DNA of 63,508 bases, the filler included, from Octopus bimaculoides (lineage: Eukaryota): the NCBI RefSeq assembly GCF_001194135.2. It is 6 parts of 5 records of this genome, joined end to end, with 100 filler letters (N's around TTAATTAATTAA, not from the genome) between each part and the next. Parts side by side here need not be neighbours in the genome. Positions count along the whole stretch, not along the records: positions 46,291 to 59,602 come from NC_068983.1; 5 more parts are not named here. One strand, given 5' to 3'. Position 1 is the stretch's first letter. Each line of letters starts with the position of its first letter. The position numbers and the translations under genes are program-made. The notes beneath the pieces were generated by a model, which was given only the letters and a program-made list of their open reading frames with translations, did not search any database and was not told where the DNA came from. Positions 46,191 to 59,602 of this stretch are shown here, one piece after another.

Positions 46191-46779
46191 NNNNNNNNNN
46201 NNNNNNNNNNNNNNNNNNNNNNNNNNNNNNNNNNTTAATTAATTAANNNNNNNNNNNNNNNNNNNNNNNNNNNNNNNNNNNNNNNNNNNNTATATATATG
46301 TATATATATATATGTATATATATATATGTATATATATATATGTATATATATATATGTATATATATATATGTATATATATATATGTATATATATATATGTA
46401 TGTATGTATGTATCTGATAACATGAAAACAAAGCAGGTACGTAGCTGTCACGTTCTGGAATGTAAGCTAAGTAATGAGAAAATGTAATTTATTTAAATCT
46501 GACATAACATTTCTTGGAAACTAAAAAAATACACGACTTTCCCTCATATTGCTAATATAAATAACATACAACATTAGATTCACAAGGAAAGTCTGAGGAA
46601 ACATAATCTATCTTTTCTAATTCTCTCTCCTTCTGCCTACGTTCAATCGTATGTTCCTAAATATTAAGAATATGTTATTATGCACACACGCACACACATA
46701 CACACACACACACACTCAAATAGGTATATAGATACATGTGTGTATCCATATCATGTGCATATTTAGGAAACTAAATGTG

Positions 46780-46822
<43 letters not shown>

Positions 46823-47732
46823 TTGTGTGTGTGTACATGCGTGTGTGTGTGTGTCCATATTGCCAATATATATGTGTGAATATATATGTGTGAATATATA
46901 TGCAATATATGTGAATATATATATGCAAATGCATGCATTTGAATATATGTATATATATACATGTATATACATATGCATAAATGCATAAGTATATATACAC
47001 ACCCCTCACGGTGGTGCTCCAGCATGACCATAGCCACTTGGCTGAAACCCATATATATATATATATATATATATATAACATAAATACGAAAAAGCATCCA
47101 TATATGTATGTATATGTGTGTGTACGTAATATATAGACTTTATCCTTGATTATAGTTTATATATATATACATATATATATNNNNNNNNNNNNNNNNNNNN
47201 NNNNNNNNNNNNNNNNNNNNNNNNNNNNNNNNNNNNNNNNNNNNNNNNNNNNNNNNNNNNNNNNNNNNNNNNNNNNNNNNNNNNNNNNNNNNNNNNNNNN
47301 NNNNNNNNNNNNNNNNNNNNNNNNNNNNNNNNNNNNNNNNNNNNNNNNNNNNNNNNNNNNNNNNNNNNNNNNNNNNNNNNNNNNNNNNNNNNNNNNNNNN
47401 NNNNNNNNNNNNNNNNNNNNNNNNNNNNNNNNNNNNNNNNNNNNNNNNNNNNNNNNNNNNNNNNNNNNNNNNNNNNNNNNNNNNNNNNNNNNNNNNNNNN
47501 NNNNNNNNNNNNNNNNNNNNNNNNNNNNNNNNNNNNNNNNNNNNNNNNNNNNNNNNNNNNNNNNNNNNNNNNNNNNNNNNNNNNNNNNNNNNNNNNNNNN
47601 NNNNNNNNNNNNNNNNNNNNNNNNNNNNNNNNNNNNNNNNNNNNNNNNNNNNNNNNNNNNNNNNNNNNNNNNNNNNNNNNNNNNNNNNNNNNNNNNNNNN
47701 NNNNNNNNNNNNNNNNNNNNNNNNNNNNNNNN

Positions 47733-47780
<48 letters not shown>

Positions 47781-49156
47781 TGTGTGAGAAAGAGAGAGAC
47801 TATGTGTGTTTGTGTATGTATGTACGTGTGTGTGTGTAATGAAACATCAATACAACTGTCAACATCATTAACTTTATGATCATCCTTAATAACGCTATTT
47901 ATCTCAATCTGTCAACATCTCGATTGTAAACAATTAACCATTAATATAAGGTGACGTTACCTTTATTAATAAACGATATCAAACATAAAATTAGAGTGTC
48001 GACAATGTCAGAAACAAGCAAAACAATATGACAATCATTGGTTGTATACTCTGTTGAAAGACAAAATATGATGCAATTGGAAAATATCTTTGCAGAAATG
48101 ATGCATCGCTATAATGGTTCTCTTATATTCATCAGTAGTTCCTATGTCTGTTTTATGTTGGAGCTATTGTGGCTGATCTTTTGTTGTTTTGTCCAGGTTA
48201 GCTTGGGTATAAGTATCTGTGTGTGTGTGTGGACTCGTTTTTCTCTCACTGTTGTATCTCCTGTTTACATCTGTTTTCTCTATTCATTCCTATGCAGCTT
48301 GGTAATGTAGCAAAGCAGGAGCTGTTACAATAGTAATAAAACAGTTGATTGCCAAATTGTCTCCCTTTGTAAGTGGTATAAGATGTCCATATATGTAACA
48401 TTAGAAGAGTTACACACACACTCACACACACACACAGCTGAATTATAACCACAAAATATTTCTCCGTACACCTATTTGTCTTCTATTTGAAATGGGAAAC
48501 CTTTCCCGAAATATTATGAGATCGCTAAACCACGCAGGTCAAATAACACAATATCATTTCTGTTTTCGTTTTTCATTTATTGGCTTCACCTTACATATTT
48601 TGTCTAATTTCTCACCTGTGTTACTCAAAGATTTTTTTTTTTACAGTTCGTTTATAATTTTATATTATCTATATCATTCTGCCGGCTACTAAGGAAGTTC
48701 TGCAGCTATTTTATCGACTTCCTTTGTAGTTTCTCAGTCCGCCATTAACGGATTAATTGGTTTTATATTTATTTGTTTTGTTTAAATTGTATCACTTCTA
48801 ATGACATCAGTTCGTGTGAATTTATAATTGCGACCAAATCGGTCGGATAGAGGATAATCAACCAAAAGGTAAGAGGTTCACACCTTACACTAGATCTTAA
48901 ACCAAGACAAACCTTAAAGTAGAAAAGTAGAAATAATAACTTGTCAATGTAAGCAGGGGGAGAAATATATATATATATATATATATATCACAAATGTCTC
49001 AGCTCAGTAGTTTATTGCGCTGTGTTGCATTCCGTCTATTCGTTGAAATTGTTGAAGGATGGACTGATGATCTCTGCTAACCTGATTTTTTCTTGACCAA
49101 CTTTATGAAAACGAAACCTCAGTGTTTATCTAATGCCTCTATGAATTGGGACAACC

Positions 49157-49760
49157 CAATACTGACCCTATGGATTATGGGATACATAATTTTCTAAACT
49201 CTGGATTATTGGAAATCTCTCTGTTCTCATTATGGATTTTGGGATATTACACATCATGGTATATCCCAGATTTTACCGTATGGATTATATTATATTACAG
49301 CTTAACCCCTGTGGATTGTGAGATATCTCAACATTGATTCTATGGATTATCTAACTCATCAGTATTTATTCTATGGATTAACGGATTTCATAGTGTTGAC
49401 CCTATGGATTATATACCACATATGTATGGACTTAATGGATTATAACCACCCCCATATTGACTCATGGATTAACTAATTCTCCAATTCTAACCACATGGAT
49501 TACAGCAATCACCAGTATTGAATACGTGGATTAGTGGTTCACTAATCTGACCCCTCTGGATTATATTCTATGACTCAGTAATGTTCTTCCAACGGATTAT
49601 ACAATTCAGCAACTCGGAATCTGTGGATTATAAAACTTACCAATATTCACCCTAAGGATTAAGGGATACACCATCATTTATTGGATTAACGGAATACTAA
49701 TACTCCTCCACTCTAAATAATAAATTCAAGGGTATTAAACTCCAGTGGATTATCATGCTC
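49157..49760. repeat. Highly diverged 31-bp tandem array with invariant GGATT(A) core
   Basis: GGATT starts at 49172, 49203, 49234, 49282, 49313, 49344, 49375, 49406, 49437, 49466, 49497, 49528, 49558, 49594, 49625, 49656, 49683 and 49747. Loose consensus CA(A/G)TATTGACCCTAT-GGATTA-TNNGATACAC. Confidence 0.9.
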
Positions 49761-50405
49761 AGCAATATTTTCATCTCATTCGACCCTCACCAATCAAGGA
49801 TGATTTGTGTTTTGATTTTTTTGCCATCTGTTGATCCCCATGGCTGGATTTATCTCCCCTTGGTATTTTCAAGATTTTGATTTCCTTTATTGTATCTAAT
49901 GTTCACAAGATTTGGTTGGTGATGATGTCATTATAGACAAAAAAAAAAGACAAAAAAAAGAAGAAAATCAGAGCATTTGGATGATTAGAGGGCTCTCATT
50001 CAGTTCCGTCATGGTTGTCAGGTTTAGCAGAGATTCCACCGTCCATTTTGAGGAAGTGTCTCTGTGTCCTCTATTCAAACACATAACAAAACACATATAT
50101 ACATACAAACAAGACATATATATATATATATACATATAAATACACACACACACGCACACTCACACACATATATATACATAAATGATGTCATAATACTGTT
50201 AATGTAGTAAATTACGATGACGTTAATGCTGATTTTGTTGCAGTAGTTGTTGTTGCTGTTGATGATGATGATGATGATGGTGATAATGATAGAAGTATTA
50301 ATGATGTGCAAACGAGAAAAAAATTATGTTTCCTAATGCATGCTGTTTCGAAGTTTCATCAATGTTCTTGCATCTTAAAGCTGAACTGGGCGGGTGGACA
50401 GTGTA

Positions 50406-50451
<46 letters not shown>

Positions 50452-50454
50452 TTA

Positions 50455-50830
50455 TGGTTGTAGGCGTAGATGTGTGGTAAGAAGATTGCTTTCCAATCCC
50501 ATGCTTCCGGGTTCAGTCCCATTGCGTGGCACCTTGGGCAGGTGTCTTCTACTATAGATTCTGGCCGACCAAAACCTAGCGTGCGGATTTCGAAGACATA
50601 AACTAAGAGGCGTCGAGCTGGCAGAACTGTTAGCACGCCGGGCGAAATGCTTAGCGGTATTTCGTCTACCGTTACTTTCTGAGTTCGAATTCCACCGAGG
50701 TCGACTTTGTCTTTCATCCTTCCGGGGTCGATAAATTAAGAACCAGTTACGCACTGGGGTCGACTTAACCCTTTTTGTCTGTCCTTGTTTGTCCCCTCTA
50801 TGTTTAGCGCCTTGTGGGCAATAAAGAAAT
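50455..50830 (+). mobile_element. Two adjacent tRNA-derived SINEs
   Basis: First: ggttcagtcccattgcgtggcaccttgggcaggtgtcttctactatag (also at ~52672-52830 + and ~56135-56300 -). Second: gagctggcagaactgttagc...gagttcgaattccaccgaggtcgac (also ~54180-54430, ~55735-55935 and ~58770-58990 on -). Confidence 0.8.
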
Positions 50831-51414
50831 AAGAAACTAAAAGAAACCCGTTGTATATGTGTGTGTGGGGGTTGTTTGCGCGTGTGTGTATAGATATANN
50901 NNNNNNNNNNNNNNNNNNNNNNNNNNNNNNNNNNNNNNNNNNNNNNNNNNNNNNNNNNNNNNNNNNNNNNNNNNNNNNNNNNNNNNNNNNNNNNNNNNNN
51001 NNNNNNNNNNNNNNNNNNNNNNNNNNNNNNNNNNNNNNNNNNNNNNNNNNNNNNNNNNNNNNNNNNNNNNNNNNNNNNNNNNNNNNNNNNNNNNNNNNNN
51101 NNNNNNNNNNNNNNNNNNNNNNNNNNNNNNNNNNNNNNNNNNNNNNNNNNNNNNNNNNNNNNNNNNNNNNNNNNNNNNNNNNNNNNNNNNNNNNNNNNNN
51201 NNNNNNNNNNNNNNNNNNNNNNNNNNNNNNNNNNNNNNNNNNNNNNNNNNNNNNNNNNNNNNNNNNNNNNNNNNNNNNNNNNNNNNNNNNNNNNNNNNNN
51301 NNNNNTGTGCTATGTGTAATTCCACGAAATAGTTTTCATTAAATGGACGATTAAATTTTCTTTTAATAAGCTATATGATTAACTCTTTTATTAATAACAT
51401 CTTACTGTTATATG

Positions 51415-51461
<47 letters not shown>

Positions 51462-53829
51462 ATATATATATATATATATATATTCGTTTATATGGATTAG
51501 TATATCTGTGGCGGGGTGTATGCGTCATAGTCCGTGTGATTACGTCTCGCTGTCTTCTCTCCGTCTGCAGTTAAATTAAAAATGCACTCACCAATATGTC
51601 TTTCTGGTGAATGGCTATTTATCCTAAATATCACAGCGTTGGCAATAGCTAAGACATGTATCACGTGACATAGAGTAATATGGCTGCCGTTATTTATGTT
51701 TTAGGTCATTGTCACGTGATTGTGACGTGGAGAGAGGGACGGGAATTTCGAGAGTTTTTATTGTTTTTACTTTTTACTCTTTTCGTGGGGTATTTTGACT
51801 GTTACACTCACGCGCGCGCACATACGCAGACACTTATATGTATAGACATAAACACATACATAGTTGCATATATTTGTATAATAGCTTTAGTTATAGTTGC
51901 AAACGTACACACATATATACATATGTACACACGTACACACATATATAAACTAATCATGTGTCTGTGTGTGTGTGTATGCGTATAATTGAAACTATAAGGT
52001 TAACTGAACAGCTTTAATATTAGGAGACAGCCTGGCTGTTGTAACTTTACTTAGGGCGATATAATTGCTATAATTAAGTATTCGGATATGTTTTGTTTTT
52101 ATTTATTTATTTGTTTATCTATTATTATTATTATTGTTGTTGTTGTTGTTAATCGCTTGTTATATTTGATTTCCTCTAATAATTAATTCTATCTTTGGCA
52201 CAAGGCCATTGCATGTATTCGTACTACAGGAATATCACTAAATCAGTCTCCAAATTGTTACCGTAATCGATTATATCGATCACAGGACAAAGATATACAG
52301 ACTTGATTACAGTGTGATCTAAATGCTAAACAATGAAGAAGCTAAAATATAAACGGCAAGGTACCCAAACACCAGTGAGGTGTTTAGAAGTACCTTAGGT
52401 TGGTCCTGCTCTTTTGTTGCCCTGTTTAGAAGTACCCGACCTCCCGCCACTGGTGTTTAATTACTTTTAATGGGATATACTTCGTTGCTACCCTGTTCAG
52501 ATTTATCATTTATTACTTGGGTATCTTTAATGTAACCCACCCGGTGACCAACATTCAAAGCAATGTCTTGCATCTGTGTATAATTTCGTACCCCCAGACA
52601 AATATATTCTGGTATCAGCCGATCCCCTGATCCAATATTTCGGATATATATATATATTTTATTCAGATATAGGCGCAGGAATGGCTGTGTGGTAAGAAGC
52701 TTGCGTCCCAACCACATGGTTCCGGGTTCAGTCCCACTGCATGGCACCTTGGGCAAGTGTCTTCTACTATAGCCTCGAGCCGACCAAAGCCTTATGAGTG
52801 GATTTGGTTGACAGAAACTGAAAGAAGCCCATCGTATATATGTATATATATATATAGATAGATGTTTTCGATCTAGTTTGAATTCTTTGCCATCAAATTT
52901 GAATTATTTGTAATCAAATTTGATTGCAAAGATAGAAAACATCTATATATATATGTTTGTGTGCCTGTATTTGTCCCCCTCACCACCACCATTGTTTGAC
53001 AACCAATTTTGGTGTGTTTTACGTCCCCTTAACTTAGCGGTTAGGCAAAAGAGACTGATAGAGTAGGTACTAAGCTTACTAAGAACAAGTCCTAGAATCA
53101 ATTTGTTCGACTAAAGGCAGCATGACCGCATTCCGTCCTTGACAGACTGACTTCATAATTCCACCTTTGTAAAAATCTTGTGAAGCCCTTGCCTCAGCTG
53201 TTGGAGTATTTGGCTCATGATTGTAAAGTCGTGAGTTCAATTCTTAGAGGCACATTGTGTCCTTGAGCAAGTCACTCTGTTTCACATTGCTCTAGTCCAC
53301 TCAGCTGCCAAATATGAGAAGTATCTGTATTTCAAAGGGGTCAGTCTGTGTTACGCTGTGTTACAATCTGTGTTACGCTGAATTTCCCTGAGAACTGTGT
53401 TGAGGGTATTCGTGTCAGTGGAGTACTCAGCCACTTGTACGTTAATTTTACGAGCTGGCTATTCCCGTTGATCGAAACAAGTGGAATATTCGTCGTCGTA
53501 ACCGACGGAATCCCGGCTTCCTGCTTTTATAAATTGCTTATATTTGTCTTTTTCTTCTTCATGTTATCATGACCAACATAGGCTCCACCACCACCACCAT
53601 CACAACCACCGCCACCACCATCATTAATACCCCGCAACCACCACCACCACCGGCGCCACCTATATAATCACAACCACCACCACTACCCCCGCAACAAATT
53701 TCGAGACAATCTCTATCACCCGGTCTCTATCACCACTGCCGCCACCATTACCCATTATGAATGTATGGGAGTGTGCGTTTGCAGGTGTGTGTGTGTGTAT
53801 GAATGCGTGTATAGCACGCACATGCACAT

Positions 53830-53883
<54 letters not shown>

Positions 53884-54434
53884 AATGTATATATATTACT
53901 CACGACTGTTCCATTCATTCTCTCTGACCGTGAGATATTTCACACACAGACAACATTGAAAGGATTGTTTTCTTCATTCTATCATTGTTACTTAGTCTGG
54001 GAAATAATACACCGGAGGTGTGAGAGAACGACGACGATGATGATGATGATCATGATCATGAAGATGTTGATAAGAATAAGTAATTATGCTTTTATCTACT
54101 TGCATCATGGGAATAATAATAATAATAATAATTATAATAATAATAATAATAATAATAAAAATGATAATCCTTTCTACTAAAGGCACAAGGCCTGAAATTT
54201 TGGGGAAGGGGCCAGTCGATAAGATCGACCCTCAGTACGCAACTTGTACTTAATTTGTCGACCCTGAAAGTATGAAAGGCAAAGTCGACCTCTGCGGAAT
54301 TTGAACGCCGAACGTAAGGACAGACGAAATAACTCTAAGCGTTTCGCCCGGCGTGCTAACGTTTCTTATTTCTTTACTGCCCACAAGGGCATTTCGTCCG
54401 GCGTGCTAACGATTCTGCCAGCTCGCCGCCTTTA

Positions 54435-54478
<44 letters not shown>

Positions 54479-54529
54479 GAATAAGAATAAGAATAATAAT
54501 AATAATAATAATAATAATATAAAAGATGA

Positions 54530-54990
54530 ACTACAACAAATATTCTGCTCAATGCCACAGATCTGCTTGACACTTGTTTGACCTTAACTAGTTGGGCATG
54601 TCCTTTGGTGGCTGACGATATGTGCATATCACGAGCAGAAGTAGTGGGGGAGCATCATAGCCATGTGTTGAGAGGAATTCTTTGGGGTTTGGATAATTCA
54701 CCTTTGGAAACGTGGCTGTTTCGTTTAACATCCTTAAACAACCCTTATTCAGAGACCTTTTGAGTGAGATGGGCTACTCAACTTGAAGAAACTTCTAACT
54801 GGTCCCCACCTACGAGGTCATGCGCTGTTTATCTTAATATGAGATTACCATGTCGTGTACATATGGTTGTGATGCATGTGTCTGGTGTACACTTAGCAGA
54901 CGAGTAGTCATGATGGGTATATTGGGCTTCGTATATTTGTACCCCAGTGTCACTTTGATGGCATGCACAGCTCTCTTACTCAATGATAAT
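54530..54990 (-). repeat. Unclassified ~450-bp interspersed-repeat-like block between (AAT)n tracts
   Basis: Complex, relatively GC-rich block bounded by simple repeats amid SINE copies. No ORF was recognised, and the class is not determined. Confidence 0.35.
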
Positions 54991-55933
54991 AATAATTATT
55001 ATTGCCATTATTATTTAACCACGGGGCCATGGATAAGGGGAACAGCATAAGGAAATTCAACAATGTGTGTGGGGAATTTAGGTAAAAGATGGGGAGAAAG
55101 AAATGGAAAAGGCAATGAAATTCGATATACATAGCATAGACAGTATATGAACACATAAAAGCTGCAGTCCTCCTTATACAACCAAGGTTAAGCAAGAAAT
55201 CCCACAGATCTAAAATTACCCTAACCACCAAAGGTACGCGCCCTCTCTCCTGCTCTCCAATCTACAGGTGCTTACTTACTTACTCCAACCATTTTTGTCA
55301 CAGTCACCTGTCTTCTCACAATTTCACTGGAAGGTGGCACTTTCCTCACCACCCTCTCGTTCTTTTCCAAGCGGAACTTAAAAGTCGATGAGAGCTTGAC
55401 CGAAGAGGAAGGTGTCTTTCCTCAATCATTTCAGCCTCGTCCACAGTAACTTTTTTCACCATAGCCACCAGACAAAGGAATACCGCCTGCCCTGCCTTAT
55501 TAAAAGTGAGTGGTGGGGTAACGCTCACGGTGGATGCGGCCGCTTGCCAGATTCATCCTACACACGAGAACGGATGCTCTACCAAGTCAAGGATTTCTCG
55601 AAGTCATCCATGATAGTTGCCGGTCCGATAATCCTCTAAAACAGTCCAGCTGGTTCCTCCACGTTGACTCCTAGAGTTTCCTCGAGAACCTCATCGCTCT
55701 TAACCACTTCTAGATAATGATAATTATTATTTCAAAATTTTGCCATAACGGCAGCTTGGGGGAGGTGGGTTTGAGTCGATTAGATCGACCCCAGTGCTCA
55801 ACTGGTACTTATTTTATCGACTCCGAAAGGATGAAAAACAAAGTCGATCTCGGCGAACTCAGAACGTAGCGACGGGCGAAATACCACTAAGCATTTTGAC
55901 CAGTGTGCTAACGATTCTGCCATTTCGCCTCTC

Positions 55934-55976
<43 letters not shown>

Positions 55977-56082
55977 GCAAGATGTAGTTTGAGCACAGAC
56001 CGCAGAGAGTGAAAGAGTCGGAGACTAGCAAAATCCCCTGAGATTTCCCAATCTAAACACATCAGGACAAATACAGACACAA

Positions 56083-56118
<36 letters not shown>

Positions 56119-56353
56119 TTATATATACACATTTATACGACGGGCTTCTTTCAATTTCCGTCTACCAAATCCACTCACAAGCCTTTGGTTAGCCCGATGC
56201 TACATTAGAAGACACTTGCCCAAGGTGTCACGTAGTGGGACTGAACCCGAAACCATGTAGTTGGGAAGCGAGCTTCTTACGACACATCCACGCTTGCGCC
56301 TATAGTAAGCTATTCACACATTTTACATATACAAATCATAAATATAAATATAC

Positions 56354-56386
<33 letters not shown>

Positions 56387-57254
56387 GAAACAGAGACAGA
56401 TTAAGGGAATTGAAGAACGCAGGATGGCTCTGAAAACGGCTTAGAAAATCAGGTAAAATACCCTTAGAAGTCGGTGGTGGGAAAAAAGTGGCCAGCAAGC
56501 CTACATGCGTGTGAGTTCCTGCTTGTGCTTGTCTTCTCCCCACCACTACCACCACTGCTTGACAACTGGTGTTGGTTTGTTTACGTTCCTGTTAAACTAG
56601 CGATTCGGCAATGGTACTGAAAGTCGATTCGTTCACCTGAAAATTTTCCAAAGCCGTGCCCCAGCATGGCCTCAGGGAAATGAATGAAATAGTTAAAAGA
56701 TAAAAAGATATATACAGAGAGAGAGAGAGAGAAAGAAAGAGTGAGGAAGTATCATTGATATTGTTTTCTCACTCAATCTCAAACATGGCGTCCGGTCACA
56801 CTTCCTTTCTATTGTTCTTCCAAAACATTTTTTTTTTCTTTATTACTTTGTCTTTTGTAGAGTTTATTTTCTCTGCCTTTCCTTCCAGTTCTTTTGAATT
56901 CTCACCCTTTCTATTCTGTGAATGTGTCTGTCTATGTGAATGCCTGTGTATATGTGTATGCCAATGTGAGTGCGATTGATTGTGCATGTGTGTGTGTCTT
57001 GTTTGACATTCCCTGAGTGCTTATCACTGTATTCCTTTCTCTCCCTCTCGGCATTCGCGAATAAGCGATTGTATACATAAATGAATACTCTCAAACACAA
57101 ACACACACATACACCCACACATATACACAAACCTCCTGATTTCCGGATTATATATGTATATACGTGTGTGTGTGTGTAACAGATATATCAATGCAAGCGT
57201 ACGCACATACATACATATGTATGTACGTATATATGTATGTATCTATATATGTAT

Positions 57255-58540
57255 ATCATTCAGTTTATTTCAAGATTTCTTGCCAATAGAGAAAGAACCG
57301 GTTTCTAACCTAGATCCAAGGTTCCTTCATTGCATTTCAACATCAACAACAGGGTATTTTTGTATGTATGTATGTATGCATGTGCAGATTTGTATGTTTT
57401 ATTATGTATTCTCGTGCATATAGTTGCATATCTAGATATGCTCATATATATATATTTAAATGATAAACTTCTGGAAAGTTTTACAGTTCCAGTGATGGAT
57501 TGGATCTATAGTCTTTGAATTAGTCGTATGGACTCGGTTGAGAACAACTGATTTAGGATATGATTGTTACACAGTAACGGTCATAGTCGTCTACGAATGC
57601 GTGCAGATTTGTGTTTTCCTTTATGTTTATCTACTCATGCATATATTTGCATATCTAAGCATGCTCATATATATTTAAATGATAAACTTCTGGAAAGTGT
57701 TACAGATTGTTACAATTCCAGTGATGGATTGAATCTGTAGTCTTCGAATTAGCTTCCTCCTTTCTGGTTTTGAGAAGCCTAAATTCTCAAGATTGATATT
57801 TAGGCAGTGTGTTACATATCGCTTGTGTTAATGTATGTATGTATAATGCATGCATGTATGTATGTATGTATGTATGTGCTGATTTGTATGTTTTATGTAT
57901 GTATTCTCATGCATAGAGTTACATATCTAGACATGCTCATATATATTTAAATGATAAACTTCTGGAAAGTTTTACAATTTTTCACAATTCCAGTGATGGA
58001 TTGGATCTGTAGTCTTCCACCTTTCTGGTTTTGAGAAGCCTAATTTCTTAAGATTGATATTTAGGCTGTGTGTTACATATCCCAGCGCGCCAATAATTAC
58101 AGGTATAAATCTGAACTTTCAATCTGTCTGTCTGTATGTTTGTATGTATGTATGTATGTCATTATTCAGTTTATTTCAAGATTTCTTGCCAAAAGAGAAA
58201 GAACCGGTTCCTAACCTAGATCCAAGGTTCCTCCATTGAAATTTCAACATCAACAACAGAGTATTTTTGTATGTATGTATGTATGCATATATGCATGTAT
58301 ATATATGAACGAATGCGTGTAGATTTTTGTTTTGTTTTATGTTTATCCTTTCCTGCATATAATTGCATATCTAGACATGCTCATATATATTTAAATGATA
58401 AACGTCTGGAAAGTTTCACAGATTTTTACAGTTCCAGCAATGGATTGAATCTGTAGTCTTCGAATTAGCTTCCTCCTTTCTGGTTTTGAGAAGCCTAATT
58501 TCTCAAGATTGATATTTAGGCAGTGTTTTACATATCCCAA
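57255..58540. repeat. Locally amplified repeat: four imperfect tandem copies of a 150-250-bp module
   Basis: ctcatatatatttaaatgataaac.tctggaaagt...acagttccag..atggattg occurs at ~57441, ~57664, ~57936 and ~58380. The block gatttcttgccaa.agagaaagaaccgg occurs at ~57273 and ~58180. Confidence 0.85.
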
Positions 58541-59530
58541 TTACACTTGCGCTCCATACTTGCGCTCAAAGCCCAACCGCTCGTCCTCGTCGTGAGAGAT
58601 GGAAACAGGTAAAGCTATGGTGAAGTTGAATGGGCTAATCATCCGTGCAATGGATTTTCAAATTGATTACGAAAACACTGATGGTTGACAAGTCTTGTAT
58701 TAATTTACCAACCGAAGGTTTCCAGAGTCAAAGGTGTTTTATATATATGTATCAGTATATATTTATTATTTCCTTACTGCCCACAAGGGGCTACACACAG
58801 AGGGGACAGACAAACGGATTAAGTCAATTATATGGAACCAAGTGCGTAACTGGTACTTATTTAATCGACCTCGAAAGGATGAAAGACATAGTCGACCCGG
58901 CGGAATTTGAACTCAGAACGTAGCAGCAGACGAAATACCGCTAAGCATTTCGCTCGGCGTGCTAACGTTTCTGCCAGCTCGCCGTCTTAATCTGTATATA
59001 TTTCTATGTATGTATGTATGTATGTATATGTCTATATATTTATGCGTGTGTGCGCGCGCATGAAACCACATACGTGCACATGCGTATGCGTCCATGTGTT
59101 CGAGTGCATATGCATATTTCTCTATATCTACCTAAATATTTAACCTACAAATATATATATATATATATATATGCTTTCCTCCTCCAGCCCATTTTTCGTC
59201 ACGCACGAATGCACACACGTTCAGAGTACGTGCACAGAACATGACCCCATACGACGCAATCAAACAATAACGCAACAATCCCTTCCCCCCCTCGCCGATG
59301 TCCATGCGTTAACGTAACACACGTGCACACGCATGTGTAATGACAATACGTGACGTCATCGTTATGCTACCACATACCTCAGCACGTGCAACAGGATTCT
59401 TGCAGTATGCATTGAGCAAACACTTCCTCTTCTATCTTTCAATATTTGATTTGTAAATTCTTAAGAAACGGAATCTCTCTCTGTCACTCACTCTCTCTTA
59501 TTCTCTCTGTCTCTCTCTCTCTCTCTCTCC

Positions 59531-59561
<31 letters not shown>

Positions 59562-59571
59562 CATATGTCTA

Positions 59572-59602
<31 letters not shown>

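What the first reader, a model, noticed from the sequence alone, without database searches (positions are those of the whole stretch)
49157..49760. Helically phased array of 18 GGATT(A) cores in a decayed 31-bp repeat, ~20 kb upstream of POU3
Seen: 18 same-strand cores, 16 exactly GGATTA and 14 exactly TGGATTA. Spacings are 31,31,48,31,31,31,31,31,29,31,31,30,36,31,31,27,64. The other ~24 nt of each unit have diverged until neighbouring units look almost like unique spacers, giving a CRISPR-like constant/variable layout. The period is not a multiple of 3 and frames are closed, so it is non-coding. Two TGACTCA (AP-1) sites have arisen in spacers. Known: GGATTA/TAATCC is the site of K50 homeodomains (Otx, Pitx, Gsc), and 31 bp is about 3 turns of B-DNA, placing sites on one face. 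Inference: a minisatellite exapted as a homotypic enhancer for POU3, with selection keeping both motif and phase. Alternatives are an RNA sponge (UGGAUU+A has the form of a 7mer-A1 site for a miRNA with seed AAUCCA) and transposase-binding subterminal repeats of a Foldback-like element. No inverted partner array was seen in this window.
Basis: partly seen in the sequence, partly recalled or inferred. Interest (0 to 1): 0.8.

Follow-up and report, generated by a model that had tools for sequence, protein, structure and literature searches.

The report
Decayed 31-bp repeat, conserved TGGATTA cores
A 600-base stretch of octopus non-coding DNA is an old 31-base tandem repeat in which only a 7-base TGGATTA word survives, which points to an array of protein-binding sites, but its claimed target gene (POU3) is not actually nearby and I could not test whether it belongs to a mobile element.

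Summary
With the cores masked, a 31-nt periodicity is still detectable, so this is a decayed minisatellite. Pairwise identity between units is 0.94 in the core, 0.36 in the other 24 columns and 0.27 at random. Equal-rate neutral simulations that allow for anchoring never gave five invariant columns. The units show no sign of recent duplication. Selection on the core is therefore well supported.

- The POU3 link is void, because that gene lies in an unrelated piece.
- Helical phase is kept only within short runs. Three steps flip to the opposite face, and the Rayleigh test over the whole array gives p=0.39.
- The two AP-1 words are near-misses of the ancestral TTGACCCTA.

The piece is octopus DNA. 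I found no terminal inverted repeats, target-site duplication, partner array or coding capacity. An old dead transposon copy is excluded, because the cores would have decayed. A very young mobile-element copy remains possible.

Copy number and orthology could not be tested, because no cephalopod genome collection was on hand. My best reading is a multi-site docking array for a DNA-binding protein, with a K50 homeodomain as the leading candidate, kept at this locus (confidence 0.45).

The parts
49103..49170 (+). Two decayed units at the left edge without an intact core (TTATGAA..., then TATGAAT-TGGGACAACCCAATACTGACCCTA)
   Evidence: A weight matrix built from the non-core columns scores 8.9 at 49103 and 17.0 at 49140, the highest score in the region. 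They also appear in the alignment.
49171..49776 (+). Main array: 18 units each with a GGATT core. Unit consensus TGGATTAT.GGATAC.TCAGTATTGACCCTA, all in the same orientation, with a modal period of 31 nt.
49240..49273 (+). 17-nt internal duplication (TGGGATATTACACATCA / TGGTATATCCCAG...) that makes the 48-nt step
   Evidence: The non-core matrix hits 49250 with a score of 13.9; see also the alignment.
49281..49443 (+). Longest run with exact spacing: six cores at 31-nt steps (49282 to 49437)
49713..49745 (+). 33-nt segment where a unit is expected but the core reads CTAAATA; this explains the 64-nt step
49458..49464 (+). TGACTCA word, formed from the ancestral TTGACCCTA by a 2-nt loss (29-nt unit)
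49571..49577 (+). Second TGACTCA word, inside the 36-nt unit
49777..49870 (+). Possible further decayed units at the right edge (GACCCTCA...GGATGATT at about 49782-49806, TGGATTTAT at 49845). Weak.
   Evidence: Read directly from the 31-nt rows printed; these do not pass the matrix threshold.

Best explanation
This is an old 31-bp minisatellite in an octopus genome. Its units have drifted almost to random sequence, except for a 7-nt word, TGGATTA (TAATCCA on the other strand), which purifying selection has kept in 18 units.

The array most likely works as a multivalent docking platform for a sequence-specific DNA-binding protein that reads a short monomer site. Many same-orientation sites about three helical turns apart would raise local occupancy through avidity or neighbour contacts. 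This would make it a cis-regulatory or architectural element maintained at this locus.

The best candidate reader is a K50-type homeodomain (Otx, Pitx or Gsc class), whose textbook site is TAATCC.

Shown: the repeat origin, the excess conservation of the core, the lack of recent unit duplication, and the partial retention of spacing.
Inferred: that the agent is a DNA-binding protein, which protein it is, and that selection acts at this locus rather than in a mobile-element lineage.
For: - **Conservation contrast.** Pairwise identity is 0.94 in the core and 0.36 in the spacers, against 0.27 at random. GGATT is invariant in 18 of 18 units.
- **Neutral simulations.** Star and coalescent trees were tried, with 18 or 21 units, and the best window was chosen afterwards. 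A run of 5 or more invariant columns occurred 0 times in 5000 in all 8 settings. Sixteen or more exact 6-mers occurred with P<=0.0034.
- **Internal control.** The ancestral unit carried a second GGAT 8 nt downstream (TGGATTATGGGATAC). Only 4 of 18 units keep it.
- **No recent duplication.** Neighbouring spacers are no more alike than distant ones: lag 1 gives 0.370, lags 2 to 8 give 0.32 to 0.42. Recent duplication or homogenisation therefore cannot explain the intact cores.
- **Spacing.** 12 of 17 spacings are unchanged despite about 0.76 substitutions per site. This has p=0.011 or less if indels occur at 5% or more of the substitution rate.
- **Not an old transposon copy.** The chance that all 18 GGATT survive neutral decay is 0.0099 at 5% divergence and 2e-4 at 9%. 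Octopus DNA-transposon and Helitron copies peak at a Jukes-Cantor distance of 0.09, and insertions at 2% or less make up about 1% of transposable-element content (PMC13282606).
- **No transposon structure.** No terminal inverted repeats, target-site duplication, partner array, coding capacity or second copy was found in the piece.
- **Site size.** A 7-nt site of about 12 bits fits a monomeric homeodomain-type reader (plus established knowledge of K50 sites).
Against: - No cephalopod genome collection was available, so copy number and conservation at the orthologous locus are unknown.
- About 66% of an octopus genome is repeats, so the prior for mobile DNA is high.
- Homotypic site clusters in known host enhancers are usually irregular in spacing and orientation. 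Strictly periodic arrays are better known from mobile elements, viruses and satellites.
- Helical phase is broken three times.
- The base after TAATCC is A in 16 of 18 units. As far as I recall, K50 proteins prefer C, G or T there.
- No binding, chromatin or expression data exist here.
Confidence: 0.45

Rival explanations
1. The array belongs to a very young copy of a mobile element, for example a subterminal or internal array of a DNA transposon, Helitron or tandem-repeat-bearing MITE. The TGGATTA words would be binding sites for the element's transposase or for a host factor it recruits. The constant-core, variable-spacer layout would have been shaped by selection in the element's lineage, and this copy would simply have inherited it.
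For: - Repeats make up about 66% of an octopus genome, with many recently active families.
- Arrays of short binding sites inside tandem repeats give transposases their specificity in Galileo and Foldback-like elements (PMC3688188).
- Mollusc MITEs carry internal tandem repeats next to a microsatellite (PMC3879986). Here an (AT)12 lies 130 nt upstream.
- Helitrons spread tandem heat-shock elements in Caenorhabditis (PMC6927752).
- The piece is crowded with SINE copies.
- Units at both edges of the array lack cores.
Against: - The piece holds no inverted partner array.
- No terminal inverted repeats or credible target-site duplication were found; the only 9-mer shared by the two flanks is at chance level.
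- No transposase-like reading frame and no Pfam hit were found.
- The array and its flanks 48000-50400 have no second copy in 13 kb.
- The copy would have to be at most about 2 to 3% diverged. Such a young insertion should still show clean ends.
- Tandem repeats in Foldback and Galileo arms are homogeneous, not saturated. This last point is from my own knowledge.
Confidence: 0.3
2. The function is at the RNA level. A transcript through the array would carry 18 UGGAUUA words (or UAAUCCA on the other strand). It would then act as a sponge or scaffold for a microRNA with seed AAUCCA, for an RNA-binding protein, or as a source of phased small RNAs about 31 nt long that start with U.
For: - All cores are on the same strand, and the layout of a constant core with variable spacers resembles repeat-bearing non-coding RNAs such as the Xist A-repeat or NORAD (my own knowledge).
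- Neither strand folds better than shuffles, and the - strand folds less well: z=+0.79 for + and +2.61 for -. That would suit an accessible sponge.
Against: - No transcript evidence is available.
- No Rfam family matches the piece.
- No microRNA beginning NAAUCCA and no TGGATTA site word were found in the held supplements of the octopus microRNA study. Those files do not hold the mature sequences and one is truncated, so this check is inconclusive.
- Same-strand orientation follows automatically from a tandem origin.
Confidence: 0.07
3. There is no function. The array would be a neutral minisatellite whose core looks conserved because the reader anchored on it, or because slippage or gene conversion between cores keeps them alike.
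For: - Units were first identified by the motif, and core-less units do exist at 49103, 49140 and 49713.
- Some unit-length changes have occurred.
Against: - Simulations that choose the best window afterwards, and that allow three extra core-less units, still fail.
- Adjacent units are no more alike than distant ones, so there has been no recent slippage or homogenisation.
- Spacers are too diverged to support conversion tracts limited to 7 nt. This last point is an inference.
Confidence: 0.05

Closest known systems
Homotypic clusters of K50-homeodomain sites (TAATCC) in animal enhancers, such as Bicoid sites in Drosophila hunchback or Otx/Crx/Pitx targets (my own knowledge)
   Same: Many copies of the same short word GGATTA/TAATCC within a few hundred bases of non-coding DNA.
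   Different: Known clusters have fewer sites, usually 3 to 10, in mixed orientation with irregular spacing, and do not derive from a tandem repeat. Here there are 18 head-to-tail sites on a 31-nt lattice. Binding was not tested, and no target gene is known.
gypsy retrotransposon insulator: 12 Su(Hw) sites separated by AT-rich spacers (my own knowledge)
   Same: A dozen or more short sites for one protein, same orientation, roughly 30-nt spacing, spacers free to vary, and function dependent on multiplicity.
   Different: The gypsy array is carried by a defined LTR element and bound by a zinc-finger protein, and its spacing is less regular. Here no element structure was found.
Transposase-binding sites inside tandem repeats of the long terminal inverted repeats of Galileo and Foldback-like elements (PMC3688188)
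   Same: A short recognition word repeated in a tandem array, proposed to supply specificity through multiplicity. Drosophila Foldback arms also contain 31-bp repeats (my own knowledge).
   Different: Those arrays occur as inverted pairs at element ends and their repeats are homogeneous. Here there is no partner array, no terminal inverted repeat and no target-site duplication, and the spacers are saturated with changes.
Iteron-type arrays: Epstein-Barr virus oriP family of repeats (about 20 repeats of 30 bp, each with one EBNA1 site) and plasmid iterons or partition sites (my own knowledge)
   Same: About 20 units of about 30 bp, each with one protein site, spaced close to a whole number of helical turns.
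   Different: Those belong to episomes and act in replication or segregation. This array sits in animal chromosomal DNA and nothing suggests an episome.
CENP-B box in alpha satellite (my own knowledge)
   Same: A protein-binding word conserved inside tandem repeat units that otherwise diverge.
   Different: Alpha satellite has 171-bp units in megabase arrays at centromeres. This is a 0.6-kb array.
Tandem-repeat-containing MITEs of bivalves (DTC84 and pearl-like elements; PMC3879986)
   Same: A mollusc genome, a short internal array of tandem repeats, and a microsatellite nearby.
   Different: The repeat unit, copy number (up to five core repeats), flanking inverted repeats and AA target-site duplication of those elements are not seen here.

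Membership tests
Minisatellite (tandem repeat with units of 10-60 bp) | Head-to-tail units sharing one period | tested here: met
   12 of 17 steps are exactly 31 nt. With cores masked, autocorrelation peaks only at lags 31 and 62.
Minisatellite (tandem repeat with units of 10-60 bp) | Units recognisably similar over their whole length | tested here: inconclusive
   TRF does not call the array at a minimum score of 30. Residual spacer identity is 0.36 against 0.27, z=11. It is a strongly decayed member.
DNA-transposon end array (Foldback, Galileo or subterminal-repeat type) | Inverted partner array at the other end of the element | tested here: not met
   Only two isolated TAATCC words on the + strand, at 54165 and 55629. 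The test is limited to a 13-kb piece with two gaps of 552 and 407 N.
DNA-transposon end array (Foldback, Galileo or subterminal-repeat type) | Terminal inverted repeats and a target-site duplication bounding the element | tested here: not met
   No inverted repeats other than microsatellites were found around 48700-50300. The only 9-mer shared by the two flanks (TATCTAATG) is at chance level and is not followed by inverted ends.
DNA-transposon end array (Foldback, Galileo or subterminal-repeat type) | Multiple copies in the genome | not testable with these tools
   No cephalopod genome collection was on hand. There is no second copy in the piece or in one 25-kb O. bimaculoides locus. Protein-level and pattern searches found nothing related.
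DNA-transposon end array (Foldback, Galileo or subterminal-repeat type) | Transposase gene, for an autonomous copy | tested here: not met
   No reading frame of 75 aa or more looks like a protein. Ten candidate frames gave no Pfam hit. A non-autonomous copy would not need a transposase gene.
K50-homeodomain homotypic site cluster (cis-regulatory) | Core word TAATCC/GGATTA | tested here: met
   16 exact GGATTA, plus GGATTT and GGATTG.
K50-homeodomain homotypic site cluster (cis-regulatory) | Bound by an Otx-, Pitx- or Gsc-class protein, in accessible chromatin | not testable with these tools
   This needs EMSA, DAP-seq, CUT&Tag or ATAC-seq.
K50-homeodomain homotypic site cluster (cis-regulatory) | Conserved at the orthologous locus, with cores evolving more slowly than spacers | not testable with these tools
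   No other cephalopod sequence of this locus could be fetched (look-ups were all negative).
   The program's note says POU3 lies in an unrelated piece. The piece itself holds no gene.
MicroRNA sponge | A cognate microRNA with seed AAUCCA in the species | tested here: inconclusive
   No such word was found in the held supplements of PMC9699675. Those files lack the mature sequences and one is truncated.
MicroRNA sponge | The array is transcribed | not testable with these tools
   No expression data were available.

The most novel reading that the evidence does not exclude
The array is a single-copy element maintained by the host. It would be a minisatellite that became fixed as a lattice of about 18 homeodomain-type sites, and has been held for on the order of 100 million years with selection on both the 7-nt word and, more loosely, the 31-nt spacing. 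That would make it an iteron-like regulatory or architectural element in a cephalopod genome, with no described counterpart among animal enhancers.
Probability: 0.25. Interest if true: 0.7.

Novelty: new member of a known kind. Interest (0 to 1): 0.45.

Why it matters
If the array is single-copy and conserved between octopus species, it would be an unusually clean natural experiment on enhancer grammar. Eighteen sites for one reader sit on a fixed lattice, and the spacers act as a built-in neutral control. That would allow direct measurement of selection on motif versus spacing, and it would be a simple substrate for binding and reporter tests in a group where cis-regulatory elements are barely known.

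If it turns out to be a young mobile element, it would instead define the binding word of an active octopus transposon family. That is useful for repeat annotation, but ordinary.

Tried and rejected
- **Pattern scans.** I scanned metagenome and viral contigs for three TGGATTA words at 29-33-nt steps. This gave 120 or more hits each, all unrelated tandem repeats or chance. BLAST of the array and its flanks against them matched only microsatellites. The one hit (P0004, E=4e-5) is a reading frame through an unrelated, homogeneous 62-bp satellite next to a LINE on an ENA contig. I rejected it as a chance resemblance.\n- **Exact look-ups.** Five reading frames in and around the array were looked up exactly; none is on record.\n- **Rfam.** No match at gathering thresholds anywhere in the piece.\n- **RNA folding.** Neither strand shows excess structure.\n- **MicroRNA seed.** A search in the papers and supplements of the octopus microRNA study was inconclusive.\n- **Octopus satellite literature.** Nothing relevant.\n- **Target-site duplication and terminal inverted repeats.** Only a chance-level 9-mer was found.\n- **Secondary conserved CA.** A CA 16-17 nt from the core is kept in 13 and 15 of 18 units, which is not significant after correcting for 24 columns.\n- **THAP-like word.** TATGGGAT occurs in the ancestral unit, but it is the part that decayed, so it is not the selected site.\n- **Sampling more octopus loci.** I considered fetching more loci through protein look-ups to estimate copy number. 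A few hundred kb would detect only families of several thousand copies or more, so I dropped it.

Full report
**What is in the sequence**

The piece available to me is window 46291-59602, with two runs of N at 47181-47732 and 50899-51305.

Between 49172 and 49752 the + strand carries 16 exact GGATTA. The whole window has 22, whereas dinucleotide-preserving shuffles give a mean of 8.4 and at most 16. GGATTT at 49234 and GGATTG at 49313 bring the total to 18 cores. Fourteen read TGGATTA. One extra GGATTT at 49383 lies inside a spacer. Both TGACTCA words are present.

**Is it a repeat, and is the core special?**

Tandem Repeats Finder does not report the array even at its lowest score, so the units are less than about 70% alike.

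Aligned on the core, the units give the consensus TGGATTAT.GGATAC.TCAGTATTGACCCTA. The repeat can be seen without using the core:
- With all cores masked, the self-match of the region is about 0.27 at every lag from 20 to 44, except lag 31 (0.370). Lag 62 gives 0.356.
- Spacers kept in register are more alike than the same spacers shuffled or rotated, z about 11.

Mean pairwise identity between units is 0.94 for TGGATTA and 0.36 for the other 24 columns. Two random sequences of this composition would share 0.27. GGATT is invariant in all 18 units.

I simulated equal-rate neutral decay of a perfect array on star and coalescent trees, with 18 or 21 units. The simulations were tuned either to the spacer identity or, conservatively, to the identity over all columns.
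- A run of five invariant columns never appeared in 5000 trials in any of the eight settings.
- Sixteen exact 6-mers appeared with P of at most 0.0034. This happened only on trees where whole units stayed alike, which is not what is seen here.

Two internal controls point the same way:
- The ancestral unit held a second GGAT eight bases downstream (TGGATTATGGGATAC), and only 4 of 18 units keep it.
- Neighbouring spacers are no more alike than distant ones: 0.370 at lag 1, and 0.32 to 0.42 at lags 2 to 8. Recent duplication, slippage or homogenisation therefore cannot be what keeps the cores intact.

I conclude that the core has been under purifying selection, either here or in the lineage this DNA came from.

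**Units without cores, and the odd spacings**

A weight matrix built from the non-core columns alone finds more units (alignment):
- 49103, where the core position reads TTATGAA.
- 49140, which has the best spacer match of all, with 19 of 24 bases equal to the consensus. Its core is damaged to TGAATT with a small deletion.
- A hit at 49250, which shows that the 48-nt step is a 17-nt internal duplication.

The 64-nt step contains a 33-nt segment whose core position reads CTAAATA. The rows printed suggest still weaker units up to about 49870.

The array is therefore about 22 units long. Its constrained block lies in the middle, and it is eroded at both ends.

**Helical phasing**

A 31-nt step is 2.95 turns at 10.5 bp per turn, so neighbours differ by about 17 degrees. 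Runs of three to six sites are therefore roughly on one face.

The 27-, 36- and 48-nt steps each rotate the next site by about 154 degrees. Over all 18 sites the phases are not concentrated (R=0.23, Rayleigh p=0.39 at 10.5 bp per turn). 'An array of 18 sites on one face' is therefore not correct.

Even so, 12 of 17 spacings are unchanged, although the spacers carry about 0.76 substitutions per site. If indels arise at 5% or more of the substitution rate, that has p=0.011 or less. This is a hint of a loose constraint on spacing. It rests on an assumed indel rate and on a star-like history.

**The AP-1 words**

The piece holds only two TGASTCA words, both inside the array. For the window as a whole that number is what chance gives (1.94 expected). 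Both words sit where the ancestral unit reads TTGACCCTA, one or two changes away. They are by-products, not evidence of added function.

**Surroundings and origin**

- The piece has no convincing coding sequence. Ten of the better reading frames have no Pfam match, and no Rfam family reaches its threshold.
- The piece is AT-rich and full of microsatellites. It carries five or six copies of a SINE-like repeat.
- A reading frame through that repeat matched an Octopus bimaculoides protein. The 25-kb chromosome locus fetched through it (L241, GCA_001194135.2) holds several copies that are 75-92% identical to those in the piece. The DNA is therefore from an octopus.

**Mobile element or host element?**

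This is the decisive question, and I could not answer it directly because no cephalopod genome collection was on hand. All indirect routes came back empty:
- Pattern scans of metagenome and viral contigs returned only unrelated tandem repeats.
- A six-frame pseudo-protein of the array found nothing among 5.8 billion proteins.
- Five exact look-ups of local reading frames found nothing.
- The one hit among 1.84 billion representative proteins is a frame through an unrelated 62-bp satellite.

The local structure gives no support for a transposon:
- No inverted partner array.
- No terminal inverted repeats.
- Only a chance-level 9-mer shared by the flanks.
- No second copy of the array or of 48000-50400 in the piece.

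One quantitative argument narrows the field. If this were a neutrally decaying copy of an element whose own lineage had selected the cores, all 18 GGATT would survive with probability 0.16 at 2% divergence, 0.0099 at 5% and 2e-4 at 9%. In Octopus vulgaris, DNA-transposon and Helitron copies peak at a Jukes-Cantor distance of 0.09, and insertions at 2% or less make up about 1% of transposable-element content (PMC13282606).

An old, dead transposon copy is therefore excluded. Two readings remain: constraint at this locus, or a very young insertion. A very young insertion should still show clean ends, and I did not find any. Repeats make up about two thirds of the genome, so I keep a substantial probability (0.30) for the mobile-element reading.

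**How it most likely works**

A 7-nt word of about 12 bits is the size of a monomer site for a homeodomain-type reader. GGATTA/TAATCC is the textbook site of K50 homeodomains (Bicoid, Otx, Pitx, Gsc); that is established knowledge and was not tested here. A caveat from my own recollection is that these proteins seldom prefer A after TAATCC, which is what 16 of 18 units have.

A short word like this occurs very often in a large genome. Repeating it about 18 times in one orientation on a lattice of about three turns gives high local occupancy and specificity through multiplicity. The same logic has been proposed for Galileo transposase sites in tandem repeats (PMC3688188). From my own knowledge, it is also used by the gypsy insulator and by the 30-bp repeats of Epstein-Barr virus oriP.

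I therefore read the array as a multivalent docking platform for a DNA-binding protein. That proteins bind, which protein it is, and what follows from binding (activation, insulation, or recruitment of a transposase) are all inferences.

**RNA-level rival**

Neither strand folds better than shuffles: z=+0.79 for the + strand and +2.61 for the - strand. The search for an octopus microRNA with seed AAUCCA was inconclusive, because the held supplements of PMC9699675 do not contain mature sequences. Same-strand orientation follows from the tandem origin and is not evidence for transcription. I give this reading 0.07.

**Age**

The spacers carry about 0.76 substitutions per site (star model). Using the octopus rate implied by a Jukes-Cantor distance of 0.09 per 25 million years, in-place neutral decay from a perfect array would take on the order of 200 million years. 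This is a rough figure that depends on the model. If it is right, the host reading implies a very old element. If the array came from a mobile element, the divergence could have built up in that lineage instead.

**Verdict**

The minisatellite origin is supported. The POU3 link, whole-array phasing and the AP-1 significance are not. K50 binding and copy number remain open.

The array is a new example of a known kind of object, a tandem-repeat-derived array of binding sites. It is notable for the sharp contrast between invariant cores and saturated spacers. Interest is moderate until copy number and orthology are known.

Noticed in passing
window 50460-50840, 52667-52863, 54220-54366, 55785-55936, 56079-56304, 58762-58987: Five or six copies, in both orientations, of a SINE-like interspersed repeat. 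They are 75-88% alike within the piece and 75-92% identical to copies in an Octopus bimaculoides chromosome locus (L241). This fixed the origin of the piece.
   Followed up: partly
window 57593-58536: Two to three dispersed copies of a 130-230-nt segment (86-91% alike), each next to a (TGTA)n run. Stop-free stretches on the - strand read ...LGYV.H.LNINL.KLGFSKPER.... From memory this resembles the tail of invertebrate retrotransposon proteins, but there was no Pfam match.
   Followed up: partly
window 47181-47732 and 50899-51305: Both assembly gaps abut (TA)n or (TG)n microsatellites. The gap lengths are estimates, so sequence is missing within 1.1-1.4 kb of the array on each side.
   Followed up: no
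window 48744-48757: A lone GGATTA lies 420 nt upstream of the array in the context AACGGATTAA. AACGGA also follows the core in units 49375 and 49683 (TGGATTAACGGA).
   Followed up: no
window 49171-49776, columns +16/+17 from the core G: A CA dinucleotide is kept in 13 and 15 of 18 units. It is the next best conserved feature after the core, but is not significant on its own after allowing for 24 columns.
   Followed up: partly
L242 1-1225: An ENA metagenome-assembly contig, probably eukaryotic, carries a homogeneous 62-bp satellite (19.8 copies, 94% matches) next to a LINE with endonuclease and reverse-transcriptase domains. It surfaced only as a chance protein-level hit to the array.
   Followed up: yes
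window 46291-46413, 54435-54519, 53835-53884: Long, nearly perfect microsatellites: (TATATATATGTATA) with 8.5 copies, (AAT) with 28 copies and (CA) with 25 copies. They are part of a very high microsatellite density across the piece.
   Followed up: no
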